Source of the DNA: Vitrella brassicaformis CCMP3155
Taxonomy: Eukaryota; Protista; Chromerida
Direction: 5' to 3'
Length of the DNA stretch: 64,000 bases
Assembly (NCBI GenBank): GCA_001179505.1
Contig: CDMY01000321.1
Span: 1 to 64,000, forward strand
Positions 6,445 to 62,732 of the stretch are shown in pieces. The translations under genes and the position numbers were made by a program. How positions within the stretch are numbered: the stretch's first letter is position 1; each line of letters begins with the position of its first letter. The notes below the pieces were generated by a model that was given only the letters and a program-made list of their open reading frames with translations, was not told the origin of the DNA and ran no database searches.

Positions 6445-6478
6445 TGCGAGCTCAGAAGTGAGACAGGAAAAGCTCGCA
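6445..6478. promoter_or_regulatory. TGCGAGCT (6445-6452) and its reverse complement AGCTCGCA (6471-6478) in the PAO/OPR divergent spacer
   Basis: Exact octamer, inverted pair, inside a 212-nt head-to-head spacer. Confidence 0.6.
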
Positions 6479-6570
6479 GAGGAAGAAGAAGGAGAAGGGG
6501 GAAAAAGGCGCAAGAATGGGACTTCCGAGGCGTCACTGACCTCCTCTTATCGGGATCTTTCTATGGCTGC

Positions 6571-9500
6571 ATGGGTGCCTTCTCGGTGTTCCCCCTCCTC
6601 TTCTTCCTCGCCCATGCCTTCAGATCTGAGGCCTTCACAATCATCAGGCCGCCTGCCGGCGCCGCACAGCTGCCTATGCGCGCCTCCTATTCGGCTGCAG
6701 CAGCCGCCACGGCTTCTCCCACAGTCAGCCTGCCGGAGGCCACCCGTCATCGCTGCAGCATGCAGAAGGTGACGTGGTGCCAGTGTCACACGTGGAGTGA
6801 CTTGATGCAGCTGCTCGAGGAGCACCGCCATCAGCTCTCGAGGATACCTTTACACTCGGCTGTTGAGGCGCTTCATCGGGCCGCGGAACTGGCGAATAGC
6901 CCTCGATCTGGTGTGCATGCAGCTGTGCTGGACGAGCTGAGATGGCGGGCAGAAGGAGGACTGAGGGAGGCGCCGAATGCTGAGATACTGGCCAAGGCGG
7001 TGTGGGCTTTTAATCGGCTGGGGTGGGACGTGAGCGGCCTCCTCACACTCGCGCAGGAGCCCAAGTGCGTGTCGACTCTCACCCACCGCTCAGCCGTCGA
7101 TTTGCTCACCGCTATGGCAGAAGCTCGTCGGAAGAGGCGGCCAGGGCCAGCCCCGCGGACATACCCCCTTCTGACGTATGTGGCATCTCACAGCAGCACA
7201 ATGGTCTCGATGCACGTGACCAAGGCAATGTGGGCGGTGAGTGAGCTGATGAGGGGGGCCGGGGGCGGCCAAGAGACGTACGCAGAGGTGCTCGCGTCGC
7301 TGGCCGATCGGATGGTTGTGCTGATTTCTCGAGACCAATGTCGCAGGCTGCCGCAGAGCGTGGCGACTGCACTTATGGCTCTTGGTGAGACAGAGAGGGG
7401 GACGACAGAGCACCAACAGGAGAGGCAATCATCTCGTGTGTTGTACTTGTCAGGTTCCTGTGGTGTCCTCCATGTGCCCCTGAGCCGCTCCATTCTGTCA
7501 CTCGTACGGCGCCGGAGGGTCATATCTTCCTTCGCCCAGAGAGACCTCCGCGAGACGGCCATTGGCATCGCCAAACTATCTGACCTCATCCCCCACCCCA
7601 GCGACCTGTGGCAGCCCATATTTCAGGCACTGCACAGCCTGATCGATGAGGTCAATGAGAGGCAGGACGGTGGTGTTGATGTGCGGACGATGGCCAATGT
7701 GGCGTGGGCGGCGTCTCATGTATATAGGAGGGGAGAGGGGACGGGGAGAGAGGCCGGCCGGGCGGTGGGGACGCTGATGCAGTGGCTGGTGGATGAGCTT
7801 GAGGGCGGGAGGAGCTTCAACGGGCAGGACCTGGCGCACTCTGCGATAGCCATTCGGTCAGTGCGACAGCACGCAACACGTGCACAGCCACCTCCCTTAT
7901 ATTTGCTTTTGGTTTGTCGGATTGCAGGTGGTTCCACGGTGACGATGCTTACCCATCCCTGGGCCTCATCGCTGACCGCGCTCTGCTCGCCATCGACAGG
8001 CTGTCGCCCCGCTCCCTCACCACCCTGGCCCGCATCCTGACGCTGCCCCACGGTCCCGCCGCCATGCCCCCTCCCTCATATTTCATGGCTATCGAGTGTT
8101 TCCAGAAGGCGGCACTGCAGCAGGTGGAAGACCACCTGATGGCCTTCGACAGCCGCGACATGGTTGCCTTGCTCAAGGCCCATGTGCCGGGCCGCCACAC
8201 TGAGAGGGCGTTGTTCCTCGTCAATGAGCACATGGGTGCGCGGCAGCAGACCTGGCTGAATCGATCGCTGCCCGGCCTGGTCAGGCTGGTGGCGAGTGTG
8301 GGTCAAGGGCGGTCGGAGGAGACACGACGGGCGGTGGACATGGTCAAGTGGAAGGTGGTGCACCACCTGGCCGAGCTGGATGTGCCGGTCTGCGTCCACC
8401 TGCTGAACGAGCTGTCGCATCTCTGGGGCTACGCCCATGCTGCGGACACATCAACGGACCGAGACGAGTATACCAGTGTCGCCCGTGGCTGCCCCCCAAA
8501 GCACGTCGTCGTCCATCTGCTGGCAATGAAGGTGGCCGAGGGCGCTGACCGCCTCACGACGCGAGAGCTCTCGCTGACGTTCGGCTCGGTGGCTCGGCTG
8601 CACTACGGCCATCCCGCGGTCACGCAGCCGCTGATGGTGGCCCTATCGTCCATCCTGGACCACACGCAGGAGGGCACATTTGACGATGCTGGCCTGGCTG
8701 GCGTGCTATGGGCTCTGGGACGCCTTCATTTCCACGATGACCGGCTGTTGCCGCAGTTGCTGACCCTTGTGCCTTCGGTGATGGCCATCTGCTGTCCACT
8801 GAGCGCTGTGTTGGCCCTTCACGGCCTCAGCGGTCTCCTCGACGACACGGCCGTCCAGGACGAGCAGGCACAGCTGGCGATCGACACGCTCATTTCTCGC
8901 CTGACGCCATCCGTCGAGTCTCTCGCCCCTGAGTGGATCTCGTCCATCATGTGGTCCCTAGGCCGATTGCACCACCACCCGAGCGGGGGGTTTCTCAGCG
9001 CCATCGAGAAGAGGACAGTCACCGAGATGGGCCAGTGGCCCCACCAGACCCTGGCATGTGTCGCATGGGGGTTCTCGCGGCTGCAGTGGGGGGACAAGGG
9101 AGAACTATGGCGCCTGCTAGTGCAGGAGGCGACAGGGAGAGTGGAGAGCATGAACGGGAGAGAAGTGGCCGACGTGGTGCAAGCTTTCGAGGCTGCTGAC
9201 GTGCTGACGGAGGACTTCACCCGGGCTGTCCGCGCATGGGTCCGGCGTCACGTCAGGGAGAGTGACAAAGAGGGCGGGTCGTCCCTGCCTGTGCGGCTCG
9301 GGGACCTCTGCAGCCTCCAGTCCGTCGTTGACATCGACGCGCTCCCCGGGCCGCTGGGTGGTGGCCTCTCTGTGTGGCGTCTGCCCTACAAGCACCTGCA
9401 TGACCCGAGCCTTCTGGACGACGAGTACCTGGTGTGGCTCGTGGGCCAGCTGCCCAGGTCTCCTCTGCGCAGGTGCTCAGAGCTGGGCGATCTGCTCGTC

Positions 9501-10398
9501 TGGGAGGTGGCTGCTAGGGCCGCGGAGTGGCCGCTGGAGCGGCTAAGGGAAGCACTGGAGCACCTCTACAAACTGCACGTGAGACCAAAGCAACAAGCAA
9601 ACAAAATCACATTGGCGCATGTCTTCCACGCACCAATTCACTCAGGTGTCTGACGACCGGCTGATCGAGCCTCTCCGCCAGTCCCTGTTGTCGCGGCTGC
9701 ATTGCGAGTCCATCCCCCTCCCAACACTCATGTCGATCGTCAGATCCCTCGCCGCACTCACACAGCGCACTGCCGATCGAGCAGCCCTGCACTCACCGCC
9801 ACCAGCCCCCATCCATGGTGGCCCGTCAGAGCGCCTCGGCCGCCCTCCCGTCGCAGCACACAACGAAACGGCTCAGAGCGCCCTGCACGATGCACTGGTG
9901 GAGAGGGTGGCTGACGAGATGGAGAGGGTGTCACCCTCCGAGGCCTCACGACTCCTGCTGGGTGTGTCCACCCTCGTCCATAGAGACCACCCTGACGACA
10001 GTGCGCTGCCGCCGATGTCTGAGGGCGAGAAGAGCACACAGCTGCCCACCAGGCTCCCCCGCAAGTTTGCGCTCCGGCTTCCAGCGGGGTCAAGCAGCGG
10101 GGACAGCAGTCAGCAGATTGAGAGAGGTCACCTAGCATCGTCGGTGCGGCGGTGGCTCGCACAGGAGAAGGTCGTGACGTCGCTGACATGGGAGGACCTG
10201 GCGAGCATCGGCACCGCCCTGAACCGGCTGCGTTGGCGCGATGACGTCATGTACGGTGTGCTGACAAACGAAGTGGCTCGTAGGCGGCTTGCTGTGGATA
10301 ACGATGGATCTGCCGATGGCCGGTGGGAGGCAATCATGAGTCTGGCGTGGTGGGGTGCGGGGGTCAAGGGCAGGAGGGAGGATTGTGCTGTCGTGTGA
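6571..10398 (+). CDS. Organelle (probably plastid)-targeted helical-repeat RNA-binding protein, OPR/HPR/FAST-like
   Basis: Signal peptide + AF motif (MGAFSVFPLLFFLAHAFRSEAF) and many degenerate repeats (LAKAVWAFNRLGW, MANVAWAASHV, LAGVLWALGRLHFHD, ISSIMWSLGRLHHHP, LACVAWGFSRLQW). ORFs 6385-8040, 7914-9653 and 9619-10398 are joined by GT-AG introns at ~7857-7928 and ~9579-9645. Confidence 0.75.
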
Positions 10399-10749
10399 TG
10401 TCATGTGAGGACTAGTGTCGAGCTGGCCAGGAGATATCTGAGAGCTGTCAAGGAAGAAGGGGCTGTCAGGCGACGGCCCTGCACCGCATTTTTGTACCAT
10501 GAGGGAGTGCGTGAGTGAGCGATGGAGTGAGTGAGTGAGTGAGTGCACTACTGTGCACGCGACTGACTAGATGCGGTTTTGACATGAGTCGCGATGGATG
10601 GAGGACACGCACCATGAAGCTCATTTTCGAGATGTCCCCTTCAGCCTATAACAATTGCAATGGCGTTGCCTGTCAGCCTGTCTAACTCGTGCACAACGAG
10701 CATCGTCTGATGCAATCCACGATCCCTCTGGTGAGTCTCACAGTGGGAA

Positions 10750-10806
10750 TCGCACTGATGCGCCCCTCGATCCAAGCCACCCCTACCAGCTCCGTTTATC
10801 GCTGTC
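10750..10806 (+). repeat. Imperfect direct repeat, copy A (upstream of alpha-kinase)
   Basis: tcgcactgatgc-gcccctcgat-ccaagccacccctaccagct-ccgtttatcgctgtc matches copy B at 14609-14662. Confidence 0.8.
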
Positions 10807-10953
10807 GATGCAGCTACAGGGCAAGTAGCTCAAAAGGCGCTTGTGAGTTGAGCCCACGGCAGTTTGGCGTGGAACTCCTCGGCCAGCATTGATAACGGCT
10901 AGAACCTGGCCAGTTGTTCCGTTGCACGCGCTACTTTCCATCCTCTTGTCTTC

Positions 10954-13881
10954 ATGTCCGATCCGCGCAGCGCCGGGACTGCCAGCTTTGGCGGCAGCGC
11001 TGGCGGCAGTGCCAGTCGAGATGACACAGTCAAGCGCCTCGTGCGTGCGTTGGAGGCGGAGAAAGCACGTGCTGCTGCGCTTGAGGCCACCAAGGGCATG
11101 ACTGTGCGGAGGCTCGAGAAAGAGAAGCACGACATGGAGAAGAAGCTCGAGAAGGAGCGGGCCACCAAGGCCATCCGTCGCGCTCGGGAGGCTGAGACCG
11201 AGCGCGAGACCGCTCGCAAGCGTGTGGGGGTAGGAACGCGACAGGCAACGGCCGGTCAGGCACTCGCCTACTTATCCCGCCCTGCCTGCTTGTCCCCTCG
11301 TGCAATTCAGAGCCTCGTGAAGCTTCAAGTGGAGGTTTGCACGTCGGTTGACGTTGTTATCATGATGGACCTGACGGGCTCCATGTCGGGCTGAATCCAG
11401 GCGGCCAAGGACTACGCCAGGGACATCATCAGCGAACTCAAGGCAAGCAAGCAAGAGAGAGGCCGTCACACGCACGAACGGCCTTGAGGCAACGAAACGC
11501 ATTATCTGCTTCTCCGCACGCAGAGGGAGTATCCGGAGATGGCGTTTCGGCTGGGCTTCGTTGGTTATCGCGACCACGGCGATGGGCCGCAGCGACTCGT
11601 CATCGGCAGCCTGACCTCCGACATCTCCTCCATCGAGGGCCTCATCGCCCGCCAGTCCGCTACCGGTGGTGCCGACGGCCCCGAGGATGTCGCTGGGGCG
11701 CTGAAGGCAGCAGGTGACATGCCCTGGAAGGCCGCGACGCGTCTGGTGATCCACATTGGTGATGCTCCTCCTCACGGCACGCAGTACTACTACAAGGGAA
11801 TGGGCGACGAGTAAGTCTGGTCGATCGATTCCACACCGATGGATGTGTGTCCGTGATATGTGTCCGGCTGCAGCTACCCTCGCGGTGACCCAAACGGCAT
11901 GGTGAGGGATGGAAACAAAGGGGGCTCATGAAACGTTTCTGTTGCTGCGCTGCGTGCAGAGGATTGAGGATTTGATGCGTGGCTTCTCGAGGGAGTTGTG
12001 CATCGACTATCGGTTCGTCAAGATCAACAACAGCACTGACCGCATGATCGAGGTGATGCGTGGCGCCTACAACGACCCCGCCACTCTGCGGGAGCTCAAG
12101 GTCATCCCATTGGGCAGCGACACCAGCGCCCTCAAAGCCTGCGTCGTCGGTCCGGTAAGCGAGAAACGATGTGTCGCCGACCGACGCGCGAAGATGCTCT
12201 GTGACGTGATTGAACTCCAGGTCAAGGAGTCCGTGGCGGCCACCTCCAAGCGGCTCACGCTCCGCACTGGCGCTCGCCCCGGCCGCGGGTCGGTATTCGC
12301 TGGACCTACCGAAGGCAAGCCACGATACTGCGTCCACGTATGAGTGTCGATATGGTGCGTATCGATCAGGTTGGCTGGAGTCGATTGCTGAGGAGAGCAG
12401 CAACGGTGCGGCGCCGAGGCGCGCTCAACGGACACGTATGCTGACAGCTGCATCGATTGACACGTGTGTAATGGATGGACGGATGGATGGATGTGTGGGT
12501 CAGGTGGAGAAGGCTACTCGATACATGTAGCTGCCACGCAGAGGTCGACCACTCGACAGACTGGAAGAACCCGCCCGTCATCATCGACAAGCAGGAGACC
12601 ACCGTCATCGTCCACGACAAGCCGTTCGCCAAGGGCGCCTTCCGATACGCCTTCTACATGGCTGAGGTGAAGGTGGACGGCCGCACTGGAGCCACTTTCG
12701 AGTTGAAAAAGGTGAGCAATCGACGCACATAGACGGGCGAATAGCGACGCGTGTGGCGTCACGGGTATGTGCCTGTAGGTGGCCAAGATTCCGATCGAGT
12801 TTGAGAGTGTGGAGGAGAGCAAGAAGCTTGCGCTGGCCGACATGGAGGCACAGGCCATTAGCAAGGGACTCGCCAAGATCTTCAACGCGACGCTGTACCC
12901 GAAGCGCATCCGTCGACTGGTCGACTTTCTCGACGTTGGTGGGCACTGACGCAACACAGGCACACAGACACATATCTAGGGTGCGTATCCGTCTGTGTGT
13001 GCAGACGTTTACCAGCTGCCTGGCCGGTCTGGTGAGGAGCAGTGGATGACAGTCGAGCCGCACATCGAGGGCACCTACGTTAAGTACAACAACAACATCG
13101 GCTGGGTCTCCAACGAGATCGGCGCCGACCTCGCACAAGCCTTCAGCCATTGGACGTTCGACTTCACCGGATGCTACCTCATGGTAAGAAAGGACAGCGA
13201 CCCGGGCCATTCCTCATGCAATGGTCGCTGTGTGGTGTAGGTGGTGGACTTGCAGGGCGTTCGCAAGATCTACACCGACCCCCAGATACACTGCAAGGTC
13301 AGCAATCAAGAGACAGACAGACAGACAGACAGTCATCCAGCACCCTCTGTGCACATCCCTTGCGTTGCAGGAGACCCGTCGCTTCGGTGTGGGCAACATG
13401 GGGGAGAGGGGCATGTCTGCCTTCTTCGCCTCCCACGAATGCAACGAGGTCTGCAAGCGGCTGGGTTTGCGCCACCCTGCCGATCCATCCCTCCATGGCC
13501 GGATTTCCCTGGCCCTCAAGAGCCACATTCCTGCGGTCATCGACGTGTCGGATGACCTGGCCCTGCGTGGCCGACACGTGAGGGACGCCCATCTGGAGAT
13601 CTCTTGCGAGTTGTGTGGCGCCGTCTTCGAGGTCAGCCAGCTGCTCTGCTCTGTCCCATCAATCGCATGTGTGTCACGAATCGCCGGCTTTTGGTGCATC
13701 TCATTGCCCGCAGGTGAACGGGCACCGCTACCTGAAGCTGCACAAGAAGAAGCGCGACATCTGCTGTCTCGACTGCGAGGCTCGCCCTGGCGAGACACTC
13801 GATGCGGAGTGCGACCGGTGCGGCAGGACCTTCGCCTTCGCGCCGTAAGCACGCTATCCCTGCACACAGACACAGACAACA

Positions 13882-13917
<36 letters not shown>

Positions 13918-14096
13918 CATAAAGGGCAGGTGTATCTGTTTGTGCAATCAGGTACTGGTATTTGATGCGTGGGGTGAAGGAGCCGACCACGTGCAGGGAG
14001 TGCAAGTGCAGGGAGTCGCATCACCCGCGAGAAGTCTACCAGGTGCACGACGTGGGTGTGTGCGACGCAATCCGCCTCGGGTGGGTACTTTGCTGA
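10954..14096 (+). CDS. Coiled-coil + vWA + alpha-kinase (eEF2K/VwkA-like) + Zn-ribbon protein; carries an in-frame TGA (possible pseudogene or sequence error)
   Basis: vWA: DVVIMMDLTGSMSG*IQAAK, LGFVGYRDH, GGADGPEDVAGAL, VIHIGDAPPHG. Kinase: PFAKGAFRYAF, VAK, EPHIEGTYVKYNNN, AQAFSHWTF, VVDLQG, YTDPQIH, FGVGNMG..GM.AFF.SHECNEVC. C-terminus: CDRCGRTFAFAPYWYLMRGVKEPTTCREC. Confidence 0.88.
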
Positions 14097-14608
14097 TGTT
14101 GGTGAGAGGCGGGGGGAGAGGGCGATCGGCAGACACACGAAGCTCTCTCTCGCGTGCGTGACTGCGTGACTGTGAATGTGCACAACGGTGCATGTTTGCG
14201 CTGACCTCTTTACATACAACAGAACCAGTGTATGTATGTGACGAAATAGCTTTTCACAGCTGTCAATTGTCGGCTGGCCCAACTTTTTCACTTGGGGCCG
14301 TTGGGGGCGACTGGAGGTCTGATGCGACTCGGTTGGGTACGTGTGCGAACTCTGTTCTGATCCGCGTAATAGCGATTTTGATTGCAGGGGTCTGGTGTGA
14401 GGCGGTGTTGCATGTCTGGGGTGTTTTATGCCGCTGTGCGAAGTCCATCGGTTGGTCAGCTGACGTGAGAAAAGGGGATTGAGGGCGGATGTGCGTGTAG
14501 CGATGTCTCAGTTAAGACACCCAGATGAGAATTACACAAGGACGTTGTGGATGCGTGCCAAACAGTCCATTCATCATACTGGTTCGCAGAAACCAAAAAG
14601 ATGGTCTC

Positions 14609-14662
14609 TCGCACTGATGCCTCCCAAGCCACCCCCACCAGCTAGCTCCATTTATCGCTGTC
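14609..14662 (+). repeat. Imperfect direct repeat, copy B (downstream of alpha-kinase; 3' flank of TRMT2A-like gene)
   Basis: tcgcactgatgc-ctc-ccaagccacccccaccagct-agct-ccatttatcgctgtc matches copy A. Confidence 0.8.
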
Positions 14663-14690
14663 CCTCCAATGAATGCATCACACACGTCGG

Positions 14691-17600
14691 TCAGTTCTCA
14701 TGTGTTGTCCCGGTCTTTGTTGTCATGTCTGCGAGTCTCTCGAAGGCCACGACGGCCTCGACGTGCATAGTGTGGGGAAACATATCCACTGCACACGCCC
14801 TGGACACAGACGGCCACACACACACACACACACCAATGATCAATCACCGCACTTCATTCACAGTGCTCGCGTCCCGGCTTACTTGGTTGGCACCCACAGG
14901 CTGCCCTCTTCGCCCTTGCCCGCGCTGGTTGAAGGGGAACACAACTCGATGACATTGGAGTTGAGCGACTCGGGATTGCAGGACACGTATACGAGCCGCC
15001 TGACCCTCTGGCACCCCTTGAGGGCGTTGAGCACCGTCGAGTGCAGCCCGGCCCTCGGCGGGTCGACCACCGCACACACGTCCATTCCCTCGACAGCGTC
15101 GCCGCCCATCTGCTCGATGACCTGGCCGATGACGTCCTCGGCCTTGCCAGCCACGAACCGCGCGTTGCTGATGCCGTTGGCCTGTGCGTTCTGGATGGCG
15201 TTCTGGACGGCCTCCTCGTTGCTCTCGATGCCCACCACCCGCACAGACGGGTGCTGCTTGGCCGCACACAGGCCGATGGTCCCGGTGCCGCAGCACACGT
15301 CAAGCAGGATGGTGGGCTTGTCGTCCGACAGACACAGCCAGTCGATCGCACGCTGAACGAGACAACAGACACAACAGGGGCGTCCGTCGTCATCTGTGTT
15401 GACAGGTCTGTGTACCGACCTGGTAGAGCAGTTCGCATGAGACGGTGTTGGTCTGGAAGAAGGCCAGAGGCGCCACACGGAATCGCAGGCCGAGGAGCCC
15501 CATGAGAATGTGGTCCTTGCCGTAGAGGCGCTCCATCTGGTCGGTCGGGCTGTCGGTGGCGTCGCTCACGGCCGAGCGGTACTGCAGGAAGAGCGACGTG
15601 ACGGGAATGTCGTCGTAGAGGAGGGGGCGTCTCGAGGGGTCCTGGCCGACCAAAGAGGCAACCAGCTGCGACTTGAGCGACGACAGGGCCGCTTCGTCAG
15701 CCGGGCGCAGCACCTGCAATCAATGAGGACGCCGCACATGGGCCGACGTGACATGTGTCTGTCGTGGGATGGTCCCACTGACCTGCACGACGACGAGCAT
15801 CTCCTGTGTCGCCTTGGACATGCGCACCATCAGCAGCCGCCACACCCCTGACCGGCCAACAATCATAGAGGCGTGAAATGGACTCCAAGCACTTCAAGCC
15901 AGTCGTCGTCTGCCGCTCTCACCAGTCCCTTGAGTGCGCTCGCAGATGGGGAATGGGTTGTCGAGCAGCTTCTGCACCCACGCAACGCACGAACAGGCAG
16001 CAATACGGCCTGATTGAGTGAAGTCCTGCTTCCACCCCTGTATATGTGTGTGTGTGTGTGTGTGTGGTTGCCCTGAATGCATGGCACAGCTCATTCATGG
16101 CAGTGGGGACGTGGATCGTGTCACCTGCCGACTCCACAATCGGTTGCTGCAGCCGGCCAGCCAGCCAGCCACCCACCCACCCACCCAACAGACAGGAGCG
16201 TCATACAGTAAGGTCTGTCTGTGCGCTGGGAGGTGTCCGTCCCTTACGTTGCCTCTGGAGGTGAGAACAAAGCCCACTTCGCTGTCGCCCTCGGGTGTCC
16301 GGCTGATGGTGAACTCACACTTGTTGCGGTACCCTGCACACACACACACACACACACACGCGCAGAGAGAGAGAATATGCAGACGACGACGCATCATGCC
16401 TCCATCTATTCCCTCGCACCTCGGCGGCCCTCAGGCGGGCACCCAATCGGTTCGGCAAGCTGACCACAGACACGAAACAGGGACATTAACACATGTGTGT
16501 ATCTCTCTTGTATTCCTCCTCTCTGACTCACAGGGCATCCGATCCACGCGGGGGCGTTGTCGGGCACGCACCACTGGGGAGCCGCCACGCCCACATTCTC
16601 ACAGTGGCGAAACGTGCCGCGGGTGAACTGACGCACACACGTCTGCACACACACACGCACAGACAGACAGACAGACAGACAGACAGGCACCGCACACACG
16701 ACAGCTGTGGATAGCCTGCTGGTCTGTCTGCGGTGTGCTGTGCTTGCTGCTCACGGACGGACCTTGACGTACTGGGCTTTCATAGTGACCTGGTCGGGGT
16801 AGGACCACTTGAACAGCGGGCTCACCTTCTCGTTCAGCGTCGCGCCGTTCCTCTCATTGCGGGCCCTGAGAGAACAACGCCACGCAATCGGCAATTGGCA
16901 CACACCAACCATCCCACAACGACACTTCGCCTGCCTCCTGCCATCTCTCTCATGTGTCTGCCCTGCCCACTTCTTGAGCAGGTCGATGAGGAGGGGGAGA
17001 GTGATCTGTACGCAGCACAGAAAGGAAAGAGCCGCTTCGCATGATCTGTGCTGGCGCGGAGGTGGTGCTTCTATCTGTTTCTTGCCTGAAAGCGCGATCG
17101 AAGGTTCTTGGCCGGTCGCTCGACGTCCTCAGCGTCCTCAGCAGCCGACGGCCGCTCGCCCTCGTCATCATCTACACAAACGATCGGCACACCGGCACAT
17201 CATTTGTTCATGCCCCCCACCACACACATCATCCATCGATCGGCTGACCCCTTCTTCTCTTATCGCCCCTCTCCTGCTCTTGTCGTCTGATGCGGCTGGC
17301 GGTGACCCCCTGGCTGCGAGATGTGGCCGCGGCGACGTGCACAGTGCTGCTCTTGCACGTCTGGCCGTCGACGTCCCGCTTGAACTGATCCAGGTCGGCC
17401 TGAGTGTGGAACTCACTGAACACAAGAGATTCAAGGGATGATGGTAAATAAAGCATGTTTGTCTGTTTGTTGCTGGTGTTGGTGCCTACACGAAAGCATA
17501 GCCCTTGCTGGGCCTCTTGCTCATCTGAGCCCACTCCACACTCGTCAGCTTCTGATGGCAAAACGACACACATACACACGAACGAACACACACATGCAAA

Positions 17601-17832: not shown

Positions 17833-17878
17833 TCCTCCCACCGGTTCCCCAGAGAGCGGTTTCACGGAACGTCCCCCC

Positions 17879-17893
17879 TGCGAGCTTAGCTCG
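17879..17893. promoter_or_regulatory. TGCGAGCT within the palindrome CGAGCT-T-AGCTCG, TRMT2A/orphan spacer
   Basis: Exact octamer at 17879-17886 in an 84-nt spacer. Confidence 0.6.
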
Positions 17894-17916
17894 GATCCGG
17901 AGCAGAACAATAAGCG

Positions 17917-18640
17917 ATGCTTGCGCGTAGGACAGACTACGATGAGACGCAGATAGTTGAGCAATGGCGACGACGAATCAGACAGGTGAATGTCAGCTAA
18001 CTGCAAAGGGGCCCGCGCCGGCACTGGAATGTCCTGTGAGTGTGTGCATGCAGGAGGAGGCGAATGCCCTGGCCCTGCTACAGCAGCCGGCGCAGAGAAG
18101 GCCCGTGACCGCCCGCTATGCTTCGCGACCAGTAGGACGCACAGACATCAGGTAAGTGAGAAGGGGGAAGAGATGCCACGATTCCCCCTTTACCTGCACC
18201 TCTCCCCCTGTGTGTGTGTGTGTGCACAGGGATGTCCTCTGTCACTCTGCATATGTCAAGCCCCAGATGCCAGCATTTGTTGAGCATCAGCATCAGTTCG
18301 ACGAAGAGGATGAAGAGGCAGCAGGGGCCAGCCGCACGCTGATGTCGGGTGAGGGCTCCAACGTCTCTGGAGCATTCGGCAACTCCTCCTGTGAGGGGCG
18401 GTTCAGTCGCGCATTGGTCAGGGCGGGCAAGGAAATCGAGAGAGAGCGGTTCAAGCGGAAGATGCTGGAGAGGGAAGTGGCAGAGGTGAGATGACAACGA
18501 ATGAAGTTTGATATAGGAGACGTCCCTCTGTGTGTGTCGGGGTATGGTGGATGGATGCGTTACAGTTGAGGGCGTTGGTGGAGCGGACATTGAAGGGCGG
18601 CTCCTACAGCCAGAAGAGGAGGCCCAAGACCGCTAAATAA
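17917..18640 (+). CDS. Hypothetical ~170-aa protein (4 exons)
   Basis: MLARRTDYDETQIVEQWRRRIRQ|EEANAL...TDIR|DVLCHS...EREVAE|LRALVE...KTAK*. All three GT-AG junctions keep frame. Confidence 0.65.
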
Positions 18641-22651: not shown

Positions 22652-22714
22652 TTGTGTACTGCTGCAGCAGCAGTTTCAGAGAGCACCCAGGCGGCTGACG
22701 CAGCCCTGCAAAAT

Positions 22715-22722
22715 AGCTCGCA
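22715..22722. promoter_or_regulatory. AGCTCGCA centred between the histidine-kinase and receptor ATGs
   Basis: 64 nt from each predicted start codon; followed by the GC-box-like run ccccgccccgccccc. Confidence 0.6.
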
Positions 22723-22785
22723 GCCCCCGCCCCGCCCCCACCACCTTCCAGACACACATGCATGTCCTGGGAGACCGAATCCAGC

Positions 22786-31966: not shown

Positions 31967-31997
31967 TGCGAGCTGAGCTGTCCCCCCGGTGCGAGCT
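31967..31997. promoter_or_regulatory. Two TGCGAGCT copies in the DHDH/APE1 spacer
   Basis: Exact octamers at 31967-31974 and 31990-31997. Confidence 0.6.
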
Positions 31998-32030
31998 CAA
32001 GATTGGTACTGTTGGGATCTCGTCTGCAAA

Positions 32031-40105: not shown

Positions 40106-40239
40106 CGTCGGTGACTGCTGGGTCGGTCAAAGGGCCATCATCAGGCCGTGTGCCATGTGTCAGTCATTGATTCGGTCACAGCTTTGGCTCACCACCAATA
40201 CCCTGCAGCGGTTTGGTGGAGCACCCTACCACCAAACCC

Positions 40240-40247
40240 TGCGAGCT
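40240..40247. promoter_or_regulatory. TGCGAGCT in the DEK_C/ABHD spacer
   Basis: Exact octamer starting 30 nt upstream of the predicted ABHD ATG. Confidence 0.55.
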
Positions 40248-40269
40248 CATTGATCAGTGGCGGTCTTGG

Positions 40270-45766: not shown

Positions 45767-45797
<31 letters not shown>

Positions 45798-48473: not shown

Positions 48474-48502
48474 GATTCTATTGCCCAGAATAGTCCTCGA
48501 GT

Positions 48503-48522
48503 TGCGAGCTCCACTGCGAGCT
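48503..48522. promoter_or_regulatory. Tandem TGCGAGCT copies in the CCDC57/ADPRM spacer
   Basis: Exact octamers at 48503-48510 and 48515-48522 in an 87-nt spacer. Confidence 0.6.
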
Positions 48523-48560
48523 TAGACAAGGGAGATGGCGATGATCTCCAACGCATTTTG

Positions 48561-53130: not shown

Positions 53131-53182
53131 CGTACATCACATTAGGGACTACTGCTGACGACTTTTCTGTCCTGTTTTTCTA

Positions 53183-53190
53183 AGCTCGCA
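53183..53190. promoter_or_regulatory. AGCTCGCA in the orphan/secreted-protein spacer
   Basis: Exact reverse-complement octamer in a 101-nt spacer. Confidence 0.55.
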
Positions 53191-53231
53191 TAGGCTTGGG
53201 GCTCCCTGAAACCGCTGCTGCTTGGGGTGGG

Positions 53232-53898
53232 ATGAAGTTGATGTTTGCGCTTCGAATCGCTGCCCTGGTTTTGGCCATCTGTGTCACGGTGGCGTCAGCA
53301 AGCGGGGGGACCGTCGGCAAACGCGAAAAAGGTATGTATACGGTATCTATCCAGGGGCATCCGATGGGCGGATGATGGATGGATGGATGGGCACGTTGGT
53401 CTGCAGGTATGCTGGCGGGTGCGTCTGGCCTCCAGTATCGGCTGTCGCTCGTGCAGCAGCAGGTGCGGCAGGCCAACAACATGATGGAAGCGGCGAATAC
53501 GATTAGCAAGGTGGCGGCTGAGATGGCCAAGACCGCCCATACACAGCTGATGGATCTCATCACCAAGGGCACGGATAGAGGTACGGACCAATGGATGGAT
53601 GGATGGATGGATGGAGCATCTTTGTGTCTGTCAGCCTCTGGCGCAGGCTGTTATGCCAACAACTACATGTGCCCGGAGGATGACCCCGAGAGTGTTGGGC
53701 AGCCGTGCGGCTCAATCACCGCGGACGACGGAACGACCCTCAACTGCCGCTGCATACCTGGACACTGCACGGTGAGGGCGGCACAGCACACACACATGCA
53801 GGCTTGCTCTGCATCTGGCGTGTGTGCAGACCGAGGGATTCTATAAAATGTACGAGCGCACCATGCCGCACTTGACAGAGAGCTTGAAACGGACCTAG
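53232..53898 (+). CDS. Small secreted protein with a helical segment and a 6-Cys domain
   Basis: Signal peptide MKLMFALRIAALVLAICVTVASA; four exons in frame; C-YANNYM-C...C...C-R-C-IPGH-C; stop at 53896-53898. Confidence 0.7.
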
Positions 53899-55139: not shown

Positions 55140-55485
55140 CGCATAGGGAGTGTCAATCTCGACTCCTGGCGGCCCAGTGGACATCACTGAACAATGTCAA
55201 GGGGCTTGGGATGAGTTCGGCGCCTCCAGGCCTGCAAGCTCAATTGTGAAGAGCCAACTCGGATCGCCTTCTGAGAAATCAGCTCTTTGAAGGCTTGTGG
55301 CGGTGTTGAACGGCCTGAGAAGGCCGCAAGGAGTCTGTCGATATCGTTGATCTACCTCTCAAAGCATTGGTACGTCATTGGCGATGCATTCACAACCAAG
55401 GCGCCGTCCGTGAGAGCTGCATCCCTCATCCATCCCATTCCACAGCTTTCTCGGCAACAAGTGGTGCGGATGATCTGTCGCTGCG

Positions 55486-58400
55486 ATGAGTGAACGCCTC
55501 TCAATGTTGTCTCGAAGGGTGCGACAGCGGCTCTCCCGACCACCACCATTATCTGCGGCCTTCAGCTGCCCTCCCACGCATTCATCATTCCCGCCGCCCG
55601 TCCACTCATCGCGAGTGCATCATCATCGCTTCGTTGCAACGCTCCCTGAACAGAGCACTCAGTGGCAGGACCCCCACGGGTTCCCCGATGGTGCCTTCTG
55701 GTCGATAGATCCCCGCTACCACGTGGAGCAGGGCAGCAAGGAGTACGTCAGGCCGCCCACCGCCAACCAGCCCAGCAAGCCACAGAGCAAGAGGCCCCTT
55801 TCTCCTGGCGAGTGGGAGAGGACGGTGTGGGGCGGGAGGCCGGCGGAGGAGCTGCCTGAGGACGGGCCGATTGACGTCTGGGATGTGGGTGTTGACGGCA
55901 TGTCGTTCGAGAAGCTGTGGGAGCTTTTCTGTGACATGATCGGGCCGCAAGAGGTTTACCTGGAGAGAACCAGGATGGCTGACCCCTCAGACCTAAGTCA
56001 AGACACGGCCACTGAAGAGGGAGGAGGCGATACAGCAAAGGCTACTGCCACTATCTACCTTCCTGTGATGAGCCAAGAGGTCGTCAGCACTGCTCGGGCC
56101 GTGTGGCCGGCCGAGCCAGCCCCTGACCTCTCCGTCAAAGTCAAACCTTCATTGGTGGCCCTCTGCTTCCCTCCCATCCTCTTCCTGCGCTACGGCGGCA
56201 ATGGGGTGATCGCCGTGGACCTTTCAGCTCCCTCGATGAGGAGTGACGGCCAGAATGTGTCGCTGTTCAACAACCTTCTGCAGCCGCACATCAAAGGGCT
56301 GCAGCTGGGGGATCTGACCAACGTCATGGCGGCCTTGGGCGCCCTGGCTGTGCCCCGGGTGTTCAAGAGGGCCGACAGCATGAGGGACCTCGAGACCATC
56401 AAGATGGAAAAGCTGGCCGACGCCATGCTCGCAAGGTGTGTGTCACCGTTTGTGGAGCGGCTGCTGCAAGCGGGGTCGGTCAACAAGCAGACTGGCGAGC
56501 TCGAGTCGCTGGTGCTTGGCCTCTCGCTCTCTGGCATGATCCGCATGTACGAGGGGATCGTTCAGAGCGGTTATGCCGTCCACTTTGCGGCGAGGTGGCG
56601 GGACGTGCAGGCGATGATTTGCTCGCAGATGCGGACCCACTGCGACCGACTGCCCCTCTATCGCATTGCGGCCCTGTTCCAGAGTGCAGCCACCTTTGCG
56701 CGTGTCGATCGGCCGCTGGTGCTGGCCTTCACCGACTACGTGTGCGGCATCGTGGACGGTCTGCGGCCGAACGTCATGACGGCGTTCGTCCTGACTGTCG
56801 GGTCGTCTCGTGACGCGTTGGACGAGTTCTGGATGTTCCTCATGGCCAAGAGGGTGCAGGACAAGGGAGAGGTACAGACACATGCATGCAGAGACAGACG
56901 CGGGACGGGAGGGCTGCGTTCCTCGATGAGTGATTATTGGGTCTGTTTGTTGTGACATGTGATGGCTGATGGCCATGCATGGCTGATGACTCAGGCGTAT
57001 TCGCCAGCGCAGCTGACGCCCATTCTCAAGACCTATGCCGACGCCGGGCTGGAGGTACCAACAACACACAACACACAACACAGAACACACAACACACAGA
57101 ACCGCCTCTACATAGCTGTATGCGTCTGATGTGGCTAGGATGAGGAGTTTTACACGCGGATGGCGAGTGTCGTCAAGGGCAAGTTCTACGAATTCACACC
57201 CGTGCAGCTCATGAGGATGATTTCCGCCATGGAACGGGTCGGTAGCTGGGGGGGTGGTTGGCGGTCTGGCCAGACACAAGCAAACACCACACCACACGCC
57301 ACGATGATGCACACAATCAGTCCGCCCGCTGTATCTGCCTCTTTCCAGGTCCGTTATCGCGACGAGGACCTCTTGAAGGCTTCCCTGCAGAGCCTTGACA
57401 AGTTCTTCGCCCACTGGCTGTCGACCGACAGGGACGTCAAGAACAAGCCACCGAGAATCAGGCGACTCAGATCATGTGCGCAACCCACAGACGTCAGCTC
57501 GGTAATGCAATGGACCGGGAAATGAGTGTGCGGTTTTTCTCGCGCAGGTCTGGTGGCCAACACCCCATGGCAGCCCGTCACGGCTCTGCAGGACGGCATG
57601 ACAGAAGATGATACTGACATTGATGAGCCGGCAGCCGTCAAGAAGTCCGATCCGACAGAGGCGGTGGTGATGGCCGACACGCGAGGCCTCATCGAGCGGG
57701 CCAGGGCGGAAAACGCCGACTTCATGACGGCTGGCGGGGAGCACTCGGAGGAGTTCTACGCCCTGCCGGACCAGCTCTCGGCGGTGGACCTCTGCAACCT
57801 GGTGAGGGCTGCCGGCCAGCTGGACTATCGCGTCATCGATGAGCCGGTCCACTGCTGGAGGGCTGTTGCGCTGGCCTTGAGGTCAACGTCTCTCAACGTC
57901 TTCAGGGATTCCACTCTCGCCTCCAGCCTGATCATTCTACAGGTGGGGAGGGCAGCCAGCCGGCCAGACAGAAATCTAGAAATCGTGATGGAATGGAAAA
58001 CTGTCTGTCTGTCTGTTTGCTTGGCGGTGTGTAGGGTGAGGCGGCCCGCGAGATCCTGCCTGCCTGGCTGGATCTGGTGCTCAAGCAGAAAACGCGAGAC
58101 ACACGAAGGGAGCGGACAGCAGCCAGGAGGTCAAAAGGGCCTTTCACTCACGACAGGCGATGCATCCTGGTACACGTGTCATGTGTTTCTGCAGGCAAGT
58201 AGTGCTGCAGCAGGCTGTGCGATACGGCCTGATCGAGCCCCTTGAGCCACGTGTGCAGCAAACACTCGATGAGATCGCTCCCCAAGAAGAGGTCACAAAA
58301 GCACCGACAGAAGAAGGCCTCCCACATCCGTTTTGCTCTGGTTCCTTCAGATGGACTCAATCATGGGACCCTCTGACCGTGGGGCTCCCCTGGAGTCGTC

Positions 58401-59932: not shown

Positions 59933-60144
59933 CGCAATGCCACCTTGCCCGTTCAAAAGGCGCCGATCGTCTCCCCTTCTCTGTCACAACACCTAAGCAC
60001 CTGCTCCTGCTCTTCACCCAGTCGGCAGCTCAGGGAGAAGAGCGGTTTCAGGAAGCACGTTTCAGGGAGCACCCTAGACCCTTCTCCGCTGTGAGCTGTG
60101 TGGTTTCTGCATTCCCCGACAAAAAGGCCGTCATTCGTCTGCAA

Positions 60145-61637
60145 ATGAAGCGCATCGTCTTGCTATCACTTGCATCTGCAGCAATAGCTGCTGCTTTTCA
60201 CCTTCCATCCGGTGATCTGCACCTCTCAAGGCCGAGCAGGACTCAGGCGGCGAGTCTGAGGCGCCATGCAGCCGCGAGGACCAGTCTTGTCATGAAGCTG
60301 GCGGGCTCCAGCGCCCTCATTGTGCAGAACAAGGGCGGCGGCCACGGCGAGTTGGGGTTCCATCTGGCCAAGCAGCTGCGGGCAGCCGGGTGCACAGTGA
60401 CGCTGCTCAACGACGGGCAGCCGACGGCCAAGCCGCCCTTCGACCACTACAATGAGTTGGAGCAGGAGTATGTGGACATCGTGTGGACAGATGTTAAGGC
60501 GCAGAGGGACCTCTCTTCGGTGCTCAAGGGCAAGACGTTCGACCTGGTCTTCGACAACTGGTCCAAGGACGAGGGCACGGTGCGGCCCATCGCCGAGTTT
60601 GCGAAGAAGAACAACGTCAAGCACTACATGTACGTGTCTTCCGGCGGCATGTACCAGCCCACAGGGGATGAGTTCCCCATCCTTGAGAAGACCAAGGTCA
60701 AGGACGACTCGGGGCAGCGTCAGGTGGAGAAGACGCTCGAGGCGATGAAGGTGCCGTGGACGTCCTTCAGGCCGCAGTACATCTACGGGCCGTACACCAA
60801 CAAGAGGGACTACCTTGACTTCTTCTTCGACCGCGTCACACACGGCCTGCCCATACCCATCCCCTACGAAGGAGCCACACTCACCACACTCACCAACGCA
60901 GAGGTCAAAGGCAAACACACACCGACAGAGGGAGGGAACTGGGTGGTGTGCTCTGATGGCTTATGTGGTGTTTTTCGCTGTGTCTGTGCGTGTGCGTGTG
61001 TGTGTATGTGTGTATGTGTGTAGGACGTGGCGTCGATGTTGATATCTGCCGTCGGGAAGCAGTACGCCATCGGAGAGGTCTTCAACTGCGCCAGCGACAG
61101 GTATATGACACCACACCCACCAGCAGGGCACAGGGTTTCCCATGTTGTTCTGATTGTGTATGTGGGTGCTCAGGTACATCAGCTATGAGGGCATCGTCAG
61201 GATGGTGGCCAAGACAGTCGGCAAGGTGAGAACCACACACACGCACACGCAGAGACAGACAGAGATCGCTTCACTTTTCCATGTTTGTTTGTCTGTGTCA
61301 CTCAGGATCCATCTGAAGCGGTCAAGAGCATCGTGTACTACGACCCCAAGAGGGCCGCCCTGCCCAAGGGCGCCTTCCCCTTCCGCAACACACACTTCTG
61401 CGTCAACCCCGAGAAGGCCAAGCTCCTCCTGGATTGGAGGCCCCAACACAGGCTCGAAGACGACCTCAAATGGTCAGAGTGGCTTGCTCCACACACCGAC
61501 CTCAGCCTGGCGTCACGTGCGTGTGTGTGTTTGCGTGCGTGGTGTGCAGGTATTTCGCCGCGTACAGGTCTCTGGGCAAGCTGGCTGGCCAAGTGGACAC
61601 AAGTGCAGATGCCAAGGCGATCGCCGCTCGCGCGTGA
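60145..61637 (+). CDS. CSP41A: Plastid stem-loop RNA-binding NAD-epimerase/SDR-fold protein, CSP41a-like
   Basis: Leader MKRIVLLSLASAAIAAAF; LIVQNKGGGHGELGFHLAKQL..GCTVT..KPPF (CSP41a pattern), YVSSGGMY, FRPQYIYGP, RDYLDFFFDRV, FPFRNTHF. Confidence 0.88.
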
Positions 61638-62061
61638 TGTGAAGAGAGATACTTTCAGACAGACAGACAGCTGTGGGTGTTTCTGACACGATTTTCAACC
61701 GTTGGTTGAGTGACATTTTGCTGTTGCCCTTTCTGCCGCCCTTTCTCGCCTGCTACTTACACGTGAGCGCATGTGCATGGGTGACATTTTGATGGATGGT
61801 TAATACGCCGAGTGCTGAGGGAAGTGAATCGATCTCGGTGCCTGCTGACACCTGTTGTCGATTCCCAATGAGCTTCGTATCGCGCCAGACATGCACTGTG
61901 TCAGCACACACAGGACAAAACAGCGCTCTTCGCACCTCACGCACACTCGCAGAGCCGACAGGAAGATAGACAGACAGATAGATACACGGACAGAAAACGC
62001 ACACACACAAAACACGGAAAAAGCGACGACTTCCACCACATACAACCTTTTAACCATTCAC

Positions 62062-62673
62062 TCATTCGGTCTTGCCCCTGCCCCCCGGCCACACCACCCT
62101 CCCCACAACGTCATACTTTGACTCGAACTTGGTCTCCCAGTCGGCCAGTACCTGCTTCTCGCTCGCCGCCAAGTCATCCCAGTCGGTCCGGTTCATCTCG
62201 GACGCCTCGAACGACATGCGCGCCAGGGCGCGGGAGGCGTCCTTGCCGGCGAAGCAGTTGTAGCCCGCACCGGGGCCGTAGAAATCACGGCCGCTGGGGT
62301 GGCTCGTCATGTCAAACACCTTCCCTGTCACACACACATGGGAAGCACAGACACATACACAGGGAGGACAGGACAGATCCATCTATTCATCCATGTGTGT
62401 CTGCTCACCTCTGACTGCAATGTAGATGGGCCGCCCGTCCCTCCCGTCATACTGCGAGAGCTCCTCGAGGCTGAAATCCTTCGGACACGGATCTGGCTTG
62501 GGCGGCTTGACGAAGGGCCTCTCCTCCTTCCCTATCGATGGCTCCATGCCAGCAAAGCCCGCTCCTTTGCCCTTCATGTAGAGGAAGATGGCGAGGCAGG
62601 CGGCGCCGCCCACCGCTGCTGCGCCGAGGAAAGCAACGCTCGGTGATTGCAGCCACTCCAGCAACTCATCCAT
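62062..62673 (-). CDS. Membrane-associated progesterone receptor (MAPR/PGRMC/Dap1)-type cytochrome b5-like heme/steroid-binding protein
   Basis: N-terminal TM; [20 protein letters not shown]|[42 protein letters not shown]. Confidence 0.93.
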
Positions 62674-62724
62674 TGCGATGAAAAGGTGCCGACGAGCGGC
62701 GACGAAGCGCCGCAGTGTTGGTTG

Positions 62725-62732
62725 TGCGAGCT
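62725..62732. promoter_or_regulatory. TGCGAGCT in the MAPR/Zn-finger spacer
   Basis: Exact octamer starting 52 nt from the MAPR start codon. Confidence 0.55.

What the first reader, a model, noticed from the sequence alone, without database searches (positions are those of the whole stretch)
6445..62732. Recurrent octamer TGCGAGCT marks nearly every divergent (head-to-head) promoter
Seen: exact TGCGAGCT or AGCTCGCA at 6445, 6471, 17879, 22715, 31967, 31990, 40240, 48503, 48515, 53183 and 62725. That is 11 copies in 8 of the 10 head-to-head spacers. The remaining two spacers carry 1-mismatch copies (TGCAAGCT at 55233, TGTGAGCT at 60090). The spacers total ~1.8 kb, where ~0.06 exact copies are expected under uniform base composition. 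By eye I found only one exact copy elsewhere (27281, coding). It occurs in both orientations, often doubled (tandem, inverted or palindromic), typically ~30-130 nt from a start codon, and I did not find it just upstream of the tandemly oriented genes. Inference: a core or proximal element specifying bidirectional transcription, bound by an unidentified factor (an ApiAP2-family protein is a natural candidate in an alveolate). I do not recognise it as a described motif.
Basis: partly seen in the sequence, partly recalled or inferred. Interest (0 to 1): 0.85.

Follow-up and report, generated by a model that had tools for sequence, protein, structure and literature searches.

The report
Start-site DNA word between back-to-back genes
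In the alga Vitrella brassicaformis, a free-living relative of malaria parasites, the eight-letter word TGCGAGCT sits in the tiny gaps between back-to-back genes exactly where their messenger RNAs begin, often preceded at a fixed distance by a second conserved word, so it is most likely an undescribed signal that tells the cell where to start reading both genes.

Summary
TGCGAGCT/AGCTCGCA occurs 12 times in the window against 3.5 expected. Eleven copies lie in 8 of the 10 head-to-head gene gaps, and one is coding.

The window is Vitrella brassicaformis contig CDMY01000321.1, positions 1-64000. Adding 7.6 kb of the same contig and an independent 22-kb locus, 10 of 12 head-to-head gaps carry an exact copy, against 2 of 17 tandem or tail-to-tail gaps.

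- **Ordered module.** The octamer (M1) is often the last part of GCGGTTTCA(GG) (M2), GAGCACCC (M3), then TGYGAGCT. M2 starts 23-32 nt upstream of M1 in five cases and 48 nt in one. There are 6 such modules against 0.06 expected.
- **RNA starts.** Spliced RNA contigs end at or beside M1 in both directions. Two independent assemblies start at its first base (60089/60091), one starts inside it on the other strand (62728), and the others start 4-28 nt away. None crosses it.

M1 is best read as a bidirectional start-site (initiator-like) core-promoter element, with M2/M3 in a TATA-like position. The binding factor is unknown, and ApiAP2 is untested. I found no description in the literature searched.

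This scan has already flagged the same octamer on many other pieces of this genome.

The parts
6418..6426 (+). M2, GCGGTTTCA; starts 27 nt upstream of M1 at 6445
6445..6452 (+). M1, TGCGAGCT, in the head-to-head gap 6359-6570 (amine oxidase on the minus strand, 1206-aa gene on the plus strand)
6471..6478 (-). M1, an inverted second copy in the same gap
17856..17864 (+). M2, GCGGTTTCA; starts 23 nt upstream of M1
17879..17886 (+). M1, between the tRNA U5-methyltransferase gene (minus strand, ATG about 17832) and a plus-strand gene (ATG about 17964)
22670..22688 (+). M2-like plus M3, GCAGTTTCAGAGAGCACCC
22715..22722 (-). M1, here inverted relative to M2/M3; lies upstream of the histidine-kinase gene (minus strand)
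31967..31974 (+). M1, first copy of a direct doublet; gap between GFO_IDH_MocA (minus strand) and the DUF2854 gene (plus strand)
31990..31997 (+). M1, second copy of the doublet; 33 nt before the ATG at 32030
40208..40226 (+). M2 (GCGGTTT) plus M3 (GAGCACCC)
40240..40247 (+). M1, 23 nt before the alpha/beta-hydrolase ATG at 40270
48503..48510 (+). M1, first copy of a direct doublet; the RNA contig of the minus-strand gene ends at 48499
48515..48522 (+). M1, second copy of the doublet; RNA contigs of the plus-strand Metallophos gene begin at 48537 and 48545
53183..53190 (-). M1; RNA contigs of the minus-strand gene end at 53167-53169
53198..53215 (-). M2 (GCGGTTTCA) plus M3-like (GGGAGCCCC) upstream of M1 on the minus strand
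55233..55240 (+). TGCAAGCT, a one-mismatch candidate M1 in the head-to-head gap 55185-55503; unverified
60042..60074 (+). M2 (GCGGTTTCA), a duplicated GTTTCAGG, and M3 (GAGCACCC)
60090..60097 (+). M1 variant TGTGAGCT; two independent spliced RNA contigs start at 60091 and 60089
62725..62732 (+). M1; the RNA contig of the cytochrome b5 gene (minus strand) starts inside it, at 62728

Best explanation
TGCGAGCT (M1) is an initiator-like core-promoter element of the very short bidirectional promoters of Vitrella brassicaformis. RNA polymerase II transcripts of both divergent genes start at or within about 30 nt of it and run away from it, giving 5' UTRs of roughly 20-160 nt.

In about half of the promoters M1 is the downstream member of an oriented module, GCGGTTTCA(GG) (M2), GAGCACCC(TA) (M3), then TGYGAGCT. 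M2 starts about 25 nt upstream of M1 (23-32 nt in five cases, 48 nt in one). That is the position a TATA/BRE element holds relative to an initiator. M2/M3 therefore probably help place or orient the pre-initiation complex for the gene on the M1 side.

Shown here: the location, the enrichment, the order and spacing of the parts, and where assembled RNAs end. Inferred: that the element is recognised by a sequence-specific factor or by the basal machinery, and that it causes initiation.
For: **Enrichment.**
- 12 copies against 3.5 expected in the window.
- 13 of 16 exact copies in 93.9 kb lie in about 3 kb of head-to-head gaps.
- 10 of 12 head-to-head gaps carry an exact copy against 2 of 17 other intergenic gaps, Fisher p = 3e-4.
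- It is the top 8-mer in annotation-defined gaps, p = 9e-8.
- The only head-to-head gap of an unrelated contig also has it.

**Module.**
- 6 ordered M2-to-M1 pairs against 0.06 expected, p = 7e-11.
- GGTTTCA occurs only in head-to-head gaps in 71.6 kb.

**RNA 5' ends.**
- JGI contig L015 starts at 60091 and Logan contig L016 at 60089, the first bases of M1 at 60090.
- The other end of L015, at 62728, is inside M1 at 62725 and is the 5' end of the minus-strand cytochrome b5 RNA.
- At the 48.5-kb doublet the two divergent RNA contigs end at 48499 and 48537, only 37 nt apart, with both M1 copies between them.
- Other ends lie at 53167-53169, which is 14-16 nt from M1, and at L012 9592, which is 28 nt from M1.
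- No RNA contig crosses an M1, although L015 bridges a tail-to-tail gap.

**Other.** No Rfam family matches anywhere in the window.
Against: - RNA evidence comes from assembled contigs, whose ends only approximate true 5' ends. Four of the six ends lie 4-28 nt from M1, not on it.
- No M1 has both a sense and an antisense start mapped onto it.
- Two head-to-head gaps lack an exact copy.
- Tandem genes lack M1 altogether, so it is not a universal initiator.
- Exact copies also occur in a coding exon (27281), in a tail-to-tail gap (64326) and in a doubtful gap in L012 (21374). Their number matches chance expectation.
- M2/M3 are absent from about half of the M1 promoters and from the L012 promoter.
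- There is no functional, binding or cross-species evidence.
Confidence: 0.7

Rival explanations
1. M1 is not an initiator read by the basal machinery. It is the binding site of an abundant sequence-specific 'general regulatory' factor that opens chromatin. Transcription then starts at nearby pyrimidine-purine steps on either side. The vertebrate CGCG element TCTCGCGAGA, yeast Reb1/Abf1 and Drosophila Motif 1/M1BP work this way.
For: - Four of six RNA contig ends lie 4-28 nt outside M1. This resembles the 28- and 51-nt offsets reported for the CGCG element.
- M1 works in either orientation and is often doubled.
- It shares GCGAG with TCTCGCGAGA.
Against: - Two independent assemblies start on the first base of M1, and one starts inside it. 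No start sites were seen inside CGCG elements.
- The 37-nt separation of divergent RNA ends at 48.5 kb leaves no room for two separate pre-initiation complexes flanking a bound factor.
Confidence: 0.2
2. M1 acts at the RNA level. Because sense transcripts begin with (C)UGYGAGCU, the word would be a 5'-terminal mRNA motif, like the TOP motif, that controls translation or stability. It would not be a DNA promoter signal.
For: L015 and L016 carry the M1 variant as their first 8 nt.
Against: - Only one gene of each pair would carry the motif.
- The partner RNA starts with CGCA only.
- At two other sense-oriented sites the RNA contigs lack M1.
- The motif occurs in both orientations, and upstream DNA elements sit at a fixed distance from it. 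This points to a DNA-level function.
Confidence: 0.05
3. The pattern is a by-product of something else: chance, base composition of the gaps, or remnants of a repeated or mobile sequence that happens to sit between genes.
For: The word also occurs at about the chance rate outside promoters: 3 copies in about 91 kb.
Against: - None of 100 shuffles reaches the observed count.
- The excess over the non-promoter rate is about 130-fold.
- Flanks outside the three short blocks are not alike, so these are not copies of a repeat.
- Spacing between the blocks varies by a few nucleotides, as for binding sites.
Confidence: 0.03

Closest known systems
Initiator (Inr) elements, especially the Trichomonas vaginalis Inr bound by IBP39 (from my own knowledge, not checked here)
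   Same: A short word that overlaps the start site and is shared by most genes of a TATA-poor protist. It contains pyrimidine-purine steps (TG, CG) where the RNAs appear to begin.
   Different: - The sequence differs (TGCGAGCT against TCAYW or YYANWYY).
- M1 appears to serve both strands from one copy.
- It seems restricted to divergent gene pairs.
- Its binding protein is unknown.
Vertebrate CGCG element TCTCGCGAGA (PMC6192621)
   Same: [quoted passage not shown] It shares the GCGAG core with M1.
   Different: - The CGCG element is a 10-bp palindrome. Its starts lie about 28 and 51 nt outside it and never inside.
- M1 is a non-palindromic 8-mer with starts on or in it.
- CGCG marks a subset of housekeeping genes, whereas M1 marks most divergent pairs seen here.
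TATA box with Inr spacing, and the S. pombe HomolD box as a TATA substitute (from my own knowledge)
   Same: M2 starts about 25 nt upstream of the start-site element (23-32 nt in five cases, 48 nt in one), in one orientation. This matches the position of a TATA or HomolD element.
   Different: M2 (GCGGTTTCA) is G+C-rich and unrelated in sequence to either. Whether TBP or TFIIB touch it is unknown.
Toxoplasma gondii general promoter motif gCATGCa (PMC7854901)
   Same: A single short word present in a large share (44%) of the promoters of a related alveolate, with an unknown binding factor.
   Different: - gCATGCa peaks about 82 nt upstream of the start site in the nucleosome-free region.
- Toxoplasma 5' leaders are about 800 nt.
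- In Vitrella, M1 is at the start site and the two measured leaders are 55 nt.
Microsporidian CCC-like and AAATTT-like signals (PMC2803860)
   Same: Start-proximal words in a very compact genome with short 5' UTRs, useful for correcting start-codon annotation.
   Different: The sequences differ. In microsporidia the 5' UTRs are under 7 nt and no bidirectional use is described.

Membership tests
Initiator-type core promoter element | Overlaps the transcription start site | tested here: inconclusive
   RNA contig ends fall on or in M1 at two sites (60089/60091 and 62728). At four others they lie 4-28 nt away. Contig ends are only approximate 5' ends.
Initiator-type core promoter element | Pyrimidine-purine step at -1/+1 | tested here: met
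   L015 starts at G2 of TGTGAGCT, preceded by T. The antisense contig end at 62728 lies at the CG step.
Initiator-type core promoter element | Recognised by TFIID (TAF1/TAF2) or by a dedicated initiator-binding protein, and needed for accurate initiation | not testable with these tools
   Needs binding and mutational assays.
Bidirectional-promoter element of the CGCG (TCTCGCGAGA) type | Palindromic 10-mer | tested here: not met
   M1 is a non-palindromic 8-mer. Flanking positions are only weakly biased, with C at -1 in 8 of 12 copies and Y then A downstream. The 12-nt palindrome TGCGAGCTCGCA is not the usual form.
Bidirectional-promoter element of the CGCG (TCTCGCGAGA) type | Divergent start sites on both sides of the element | tested here: met
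   At 48.5 kb the RNA ends are 48499 on the minus strand and 48537 on the plus strand, flanking the M1 doublet. A sense start at 60090 and an antisense start at 62725 were also seen.
Bidirectional-promoter element of the CGCG (TCTCGCGAGA) type | Activity abolished by CpG methylation | not testable with these tools
   M1 contains one CpG. No methylation data were available.
ApiAP2 binding site | Matches the measured specificity of an AP2 domain, or is bound by one | not tested
   No Vitrella AP2 specificity data were available. The genome paper reports many apiAP2 genes in chromerids, but that is not evidence of binding.
TATA box (considered for M2) | TATAWAW-like sequence about 25-31 nt upstream of the start site | tested here: not met
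   The position fits: M2 starts 23-32 nt upstream of M1 in five cases and 48 nt in one. The sequence GCGGTTTCA does not. M2 may work like a TATA box but is not one.
Known RNA family or small RNA gene | Match to an Rfam covariance model | tested here: not met
   No match at gathering threshold anywhere in the window.

The most novel reading that the evidence does not exclude
One 8-bp word would serve as a shared, back-to-back initiator. Both mRNAs of a divergent pair would start inside the same octamer, a few bases apart on opposite strands, so a single pre-initiation site is used in either orientation. The GC-rich M2/M3 block at about -25 would replace the TATA box and bias the direction. On this reading, the genome's striking head-to-head gene order would be a consequence of this promoter type.
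Probability: 0.3. Interest if true: 0.75.

Novelty: new member of a known kind. Interest (0 to 1): 0.6.

Why it matters
- **Core promoters in this lineage.** Core promoters of apicomplexans and their relatives are poorly defined. Toxoplasma shows only a pyrimidine-purine start and an upstream gCATGCa. A sharply defined start-site word plus an upstream partner in the closest free-living relative gives a concrete handle on how transcription starts in this lineage and on what parasites may have lost.
- **Gene models.** The motif predicts start sites and can correct annotation. For example, RNA starting at M1 supports an ATG at 60145, which is 49 codons upstream of the annotated start of the epimerase gene and adds a signal-like leader.
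- **Genetic tools.** It offers compact bidirectional promoters of about 60-200 bp for genetic tools in chromerids.
- **Genome organisation.** It gives a testable explanation for the head-to-head gene excess reported without explanation in the genome paper.

Tried and rejected
**Searches that led nowhere**
- Chromera velia conservation could not be tested. Neither homologue search that returned hits listed a protein named as Chromera, and the third search returned nothing.
- The search of protein representatives did not return the Vitrella protein itself. One of its hits did lead, via the listing of cluster members, to a second Vitrella locus.
- Two metagenome scans were uninformative, because I could not confirm that Vitrella transcriptomes are in that collection. 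M2M3-N(4-20)-M1 gave 0 hits. The 19-mer GCGGTTTCAGGGAGCACCC gave 1 hit, inside a coding ORF of a 65% G+C contig that looks bacterial, so probably chance.
- Exact-ORF look-ups meant to fetch annotation for 16-50 kb returned only contigs colinear with the genome, probably DNA, or nothing. The middle of the window therefore rests on Pfam hits and a codon-score map.

**Readings considered and rejected**
- A small RNA gene: Rfam found nothing.
- A spliced-leader acceptor: RNA contigs carry no non-genomic 5' letters at the motif.
- A repeat or mobile element: the flanks are unlike each other.

**Sites not counted as evidence**
- The one-mismatch copy at 55233, because 54 such copies occur in 71.6 kb.
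- The L012 copy at 21374. It sits 2 nt from an annotated ATG in a 103-nt 'gap' that looks coding, so it is probably inside a split gene model.


Full report
**What the window is.** A 369-aa ORF at 4481-5590 on the minus strand is 100% identical to an amine-oxidase protein of Vitrella brassicaformis CCMP3155. Its contig, CDMY01000321.1 (122,686 bp), starts at window position 1, so window and contig coordinates are the same. The public gene calls cover 1-16,358 and 50,292-71,637. I joined the extra 7.6 kb beyond the window to it for counting.

**The observation.**
Dinucleotide-preserving shuffles give 3.50 +/- 2.07, and none of 100 reaches 12.
- The annotation confirms as head-to-head the gaps 6359-6570, 52927-53231, 55185-55503, 59933-60291 and 62674-63059.
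- From 51 to 66 kb the genes alternate strictly between the minus and plus strands.
- For the unannotated middle I used Pfam hits and a codon-score map. The Pfam hits are HisKA and HATPase on the minus strand at 19.8-22.0 kb; GFO_IDH_MocA on the minus strand and DUF2854 on the plus strand around 31.9 kb; an alpha/beta hydrolase on the plus strand from 40.27 kb; and Metallophos on the plus strand from 48.5 kb. The codon-score map was trained on transcript-supported coding sequence.
- This gives five further head-to-head gaps, at about 17.83-17.96, 22.64-22.76, 31.84-32.03, 40.09-40.27 and 48.47-48.53 kb. All five have the octamer, and there is no obvious sixth.

**Beyond the window.**
- The next head-to-head gap on the contig (65827-66024) has an exact copy at 65917. 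A tail-to-tail gap has one at 64326.
- An unrelated Vitrella locus, L012 (contig CDMY01001028.1, 22.2 kb), has two copies. I reached it through a histidine-kinase paralogue. One copy lies in its only head-to-head gap (9557). The other (21374) is 2 nt from an annotated ATG in a 103-nt 'gap' that looks like coding sequence.
- Overall, 10 of 12 head-to-head gaps carry an exact copy, against 1 of 7 tandem and 1 of 10 tail-to-tail gaps. Fisher p = 3e-4 for head-to-head against the rest.
- With gaps defined only from the annotation, so without looking at the motif, TGCGAGCT is still the most enriched 8-mer: 6 copies in 2.3 kb against 2 in 57.6 kb, p = 9e-8.
- The three copies outside promoters match chance expectation.
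- One-mismatch copies are common, 54 in 71.6 kb.

**A larger module.** k-mer enrichment in the gaps brought up a second, unrelated word, (GCAGCA)GCGGTTTCA(GG), here called M2. GGTTTCA occurs five times in 71.6 kb, always in head-to-head gaps. A third word, GAGCACCC(TA), is called M3.

The three words come in a fixed order on one strand: M2, then 2-16 nt, then M3, then 6-15 nt, then M1. Examples:

| M1 site | Sequence |
|---|---|
| 65917 | GCGGTTTCAGGGAGCACCCTACTTCTGCGAGCT |
| 53183 (minus strand) | GCGGTTTCAGGGAGCCCCAAGCCTATGCGAGCT |
| 40240 | GCGGTTTGGTGGAGCACCCTACCACCAAACCCTGCGAGCT |

- At 6445 and 17879, M2 and M1 occur without M3.
- At 60090 the full M2/M3 block precedes the 'variant' TGTGAGCT, which validates that spacer.
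- M2-to-M1 start distances are 27, 23, 32, 48, 25 and 25 nt. In the 48-nt case a duplicated GTTTCAGG sits at 31 nt.
- Six such ordered pairs are seen where 0.06 are expected, p = 7e-11.
- At 22715 the M2-like/M3 block is present but M1 is inverted.
- The doublet promoters (31967/31990 and 48503/48515), 62725 and the L012 promoter lack M2/M3.

**Where RNA starts.** No RNA run with raw reads was available, so only Logan contigs could be laid. Three of the four runs laid are clearly RNA, because their contigs skip GT..AG introns.

| M1 site | M1 orientation relative to the gene | RNA contig 5' end | Distance from M1 |
|---|---|---|---|
| 48503 (first of the doublet) | antisense; minus-strand gene | 48499 | 4 nt outside |
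| 48515 (second of the doublet) | sense; plus-strand Metallophos gene | 48537 and 48545 | 15 and 23 nt past its 3' end |
| 53183 | sense; minus-strand gene | 53167-53169 | 14-16 nt past its 3' end |
| 60090 (TGTGAGCT) | sense; plus-strand epimerase gene | 60091 (L015) and 60089 (L016) | on its first bases |
| 62725 | antisense; minus-strand cytochrome b5 gene | 62728 (L015) | inside it |
| L012 9557 | antisense; plus-strand histidine-kinase gene | 9592 (L013) | 28 nt outside |

- At the 48.5-kb doublet the two divergent RNAs are separated by only 37 nt, and that interval holds both M1 copies.
- The best evidence came from the cluster of the epimerase protein, which held a transcript-derived member. 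Two independent spliced assemblies encode it: L015 (JGI 3300017297) and L016 (Logan SRR646408).
- L015 runs through the epimerase gene, across the tail-to-tail gap and through the cytochrome b5 gene before ending at 62728. That RNA therefore begins CGCA.
- Both 5' UTRs measured this way are 55 nt.
- All six mapped RNA ends, at five promoters, lie within 28 nt of M1. No contig crosses an M1, whereas L015 readily bridges a convergent gap.

**Mechanism.** The simplest reading is that M1 marks the start site for both genes of a divergent pair.
- The sense RNA would begin at the TG step at the 5' edge of M1. The antisense RNA would begin at the CG step inside it. The transcripts then diverge back-to-back.
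- Contig ends 4-28 nt short are what 5'-truncated assemblies give, but they could also be real.
- With the start at M1, M2 occupies about -32 to -15 and M3 about -23 to -7. This is the region held by TATA and BRE elements in canonical promoters. I therefore infer that M2/M3 help to place or orient the initiation complex for the M1-side gene.
- The gene on the M2 side has its ATG only 15-110 nt from M2. A start at M1 would give it a 5' UTR of about 45-160 nt that contains M2/M3 in antisense. I could not test this.
- Which protein reads M1 is unknown.

**Rivals.**
- **General regulatory factor.** A site like the vertebrate CGCG element, with starts flanking it, fits the four offset ends. It does not fit the starts on and in M1, nor the 37-nt spacing.
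- **5'-terminal RNA motif.** This would serve only one gene of each pair and does not explain the upstream DNA partners.
- **Chance, composition or a repeat.** These are excluded.

**Tandem genes.** No exact M1 lies upstream of the annotated tandem genes at 2152, 10954 and 68351. None lies upstream of the strongly coding ORF at 42914, nor upstream of three tandem genes in L012. The sample is small and some 'tandem' starts are split gene models. For example, the two histidine-kinase models in L012 are one transcript.

**Known or new.**
- The octamer appears in 1,679 papers; the listed hits look like unrelated primer-type uses, and no paper pairs either orientation with Vitrella.
- The chromerid genome paper notes the head-to-head excess ('data not shown') but no motif.
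- Toxoplasma start-site mapping found a different word, gCATGCa, about 82 nt upstream, and 5' leaders of about 800 nt.
- The nearest functional analogues are initiator elements, the CGCG element and start-proximal signals of microsporidia.
- I file M1 as a new member of the class of core-promoter and start-site elements, not as a member of any named family.

**Earlier notes of this scan.** The scan has noted the same octamer in dozens of other windows of this genome. Several follow-ups reached the same general reading. None of the notes I could query mentions GGTTTCA or GAGCACCC or a test in Chromera.

**Limits.**
- RNA evidence is from contigs only.
- Annotation of 16-50 kb is my own reading.
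- The sample is 94 kb of a genome I take to be roughly 70 Mb (not checked here).
- There is no cross-species, binding or functional test.

Noticed in passing
window 60091-60292: The annotated epimerase/CSP41-like protein (331 aa, start at 60292) looks truncated at its N-terminus. Spliced RNA contigs start at 60089/60091 and keep the frame open through an ATG at 60145, 49 codons upstream. That ATG begins a hydrophobic, signal-like leader (MKRIVLLSLASAAIAAAF), as expected for a plastid-targeted protein.
   Followed up: partly
L012 10001-13639: Two adjacent NCBI gene models (HisKA, 430 aa; HATPase/receiver, 276 aa) are one transcript of more than 20 exons in JGI contig L013. An MMETSP protein of 726 aa is in the same 90% cluster. 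The histidine kinase is therefore split in the annotation.
   Followed up: partly
window 61638-62061: The convergent epimerase and cytochrome b5 genes are joined in single RNA contigs (L015, L016). Their 3' ends therefore overlap or abut.
   Followed up: no
contig 64326-64333 (L004 14035-14042), just beyond the window: An exact TGCGAGCT without M2/M3 lies in a tail-to-tail gap (64015-64501). It is either a chance copy or the start of an unannotated transcript.
   Followed up: no
window 51248-66024: Nine consecutive annotated genes alternate strictly between the minus and plus strands, forming four divergent pairs plus the minus-strand partner of a fifth. The gaps on the start side are 198-386 bp.
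   Followed up: partly
window-wide: On this contig, 9 of the 12 promoter copies of M1, and both variants, have TGCGAGCT on the plus strand. Five of the six M2-to-M1 modules also point the same way. This may be chance (about p = 0.1) or a larger-scale polarity.
   Followed up: no
window 6380-6386, 18046-18051, 22754-22762, 22836-22846: GCATGC or CATGCATG words, like the general Toxoplasma promoter motif gCATGCa, occur in or near some of the same gaps. They were not significantly enriched in this small sample.
   Followed up: no
window 62733-62770 and L012 9565-9573: M1 is directly followed by GGTGTTTCCA at 62733 and by GTTTCCCTG in L012. These are M2-like words in a different position and orientation from the usual module. 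At 62745-62770 there are also GGGTTTGGG repeats.
   Followed up: no
window 50743-50761, 51701-51719, 53373-53390: Short simple repeats inside introns or gaps recur throughout the genome and break both DNA and RNA assemblies. Many loose ends and false joints occur there.
   Followed up: no
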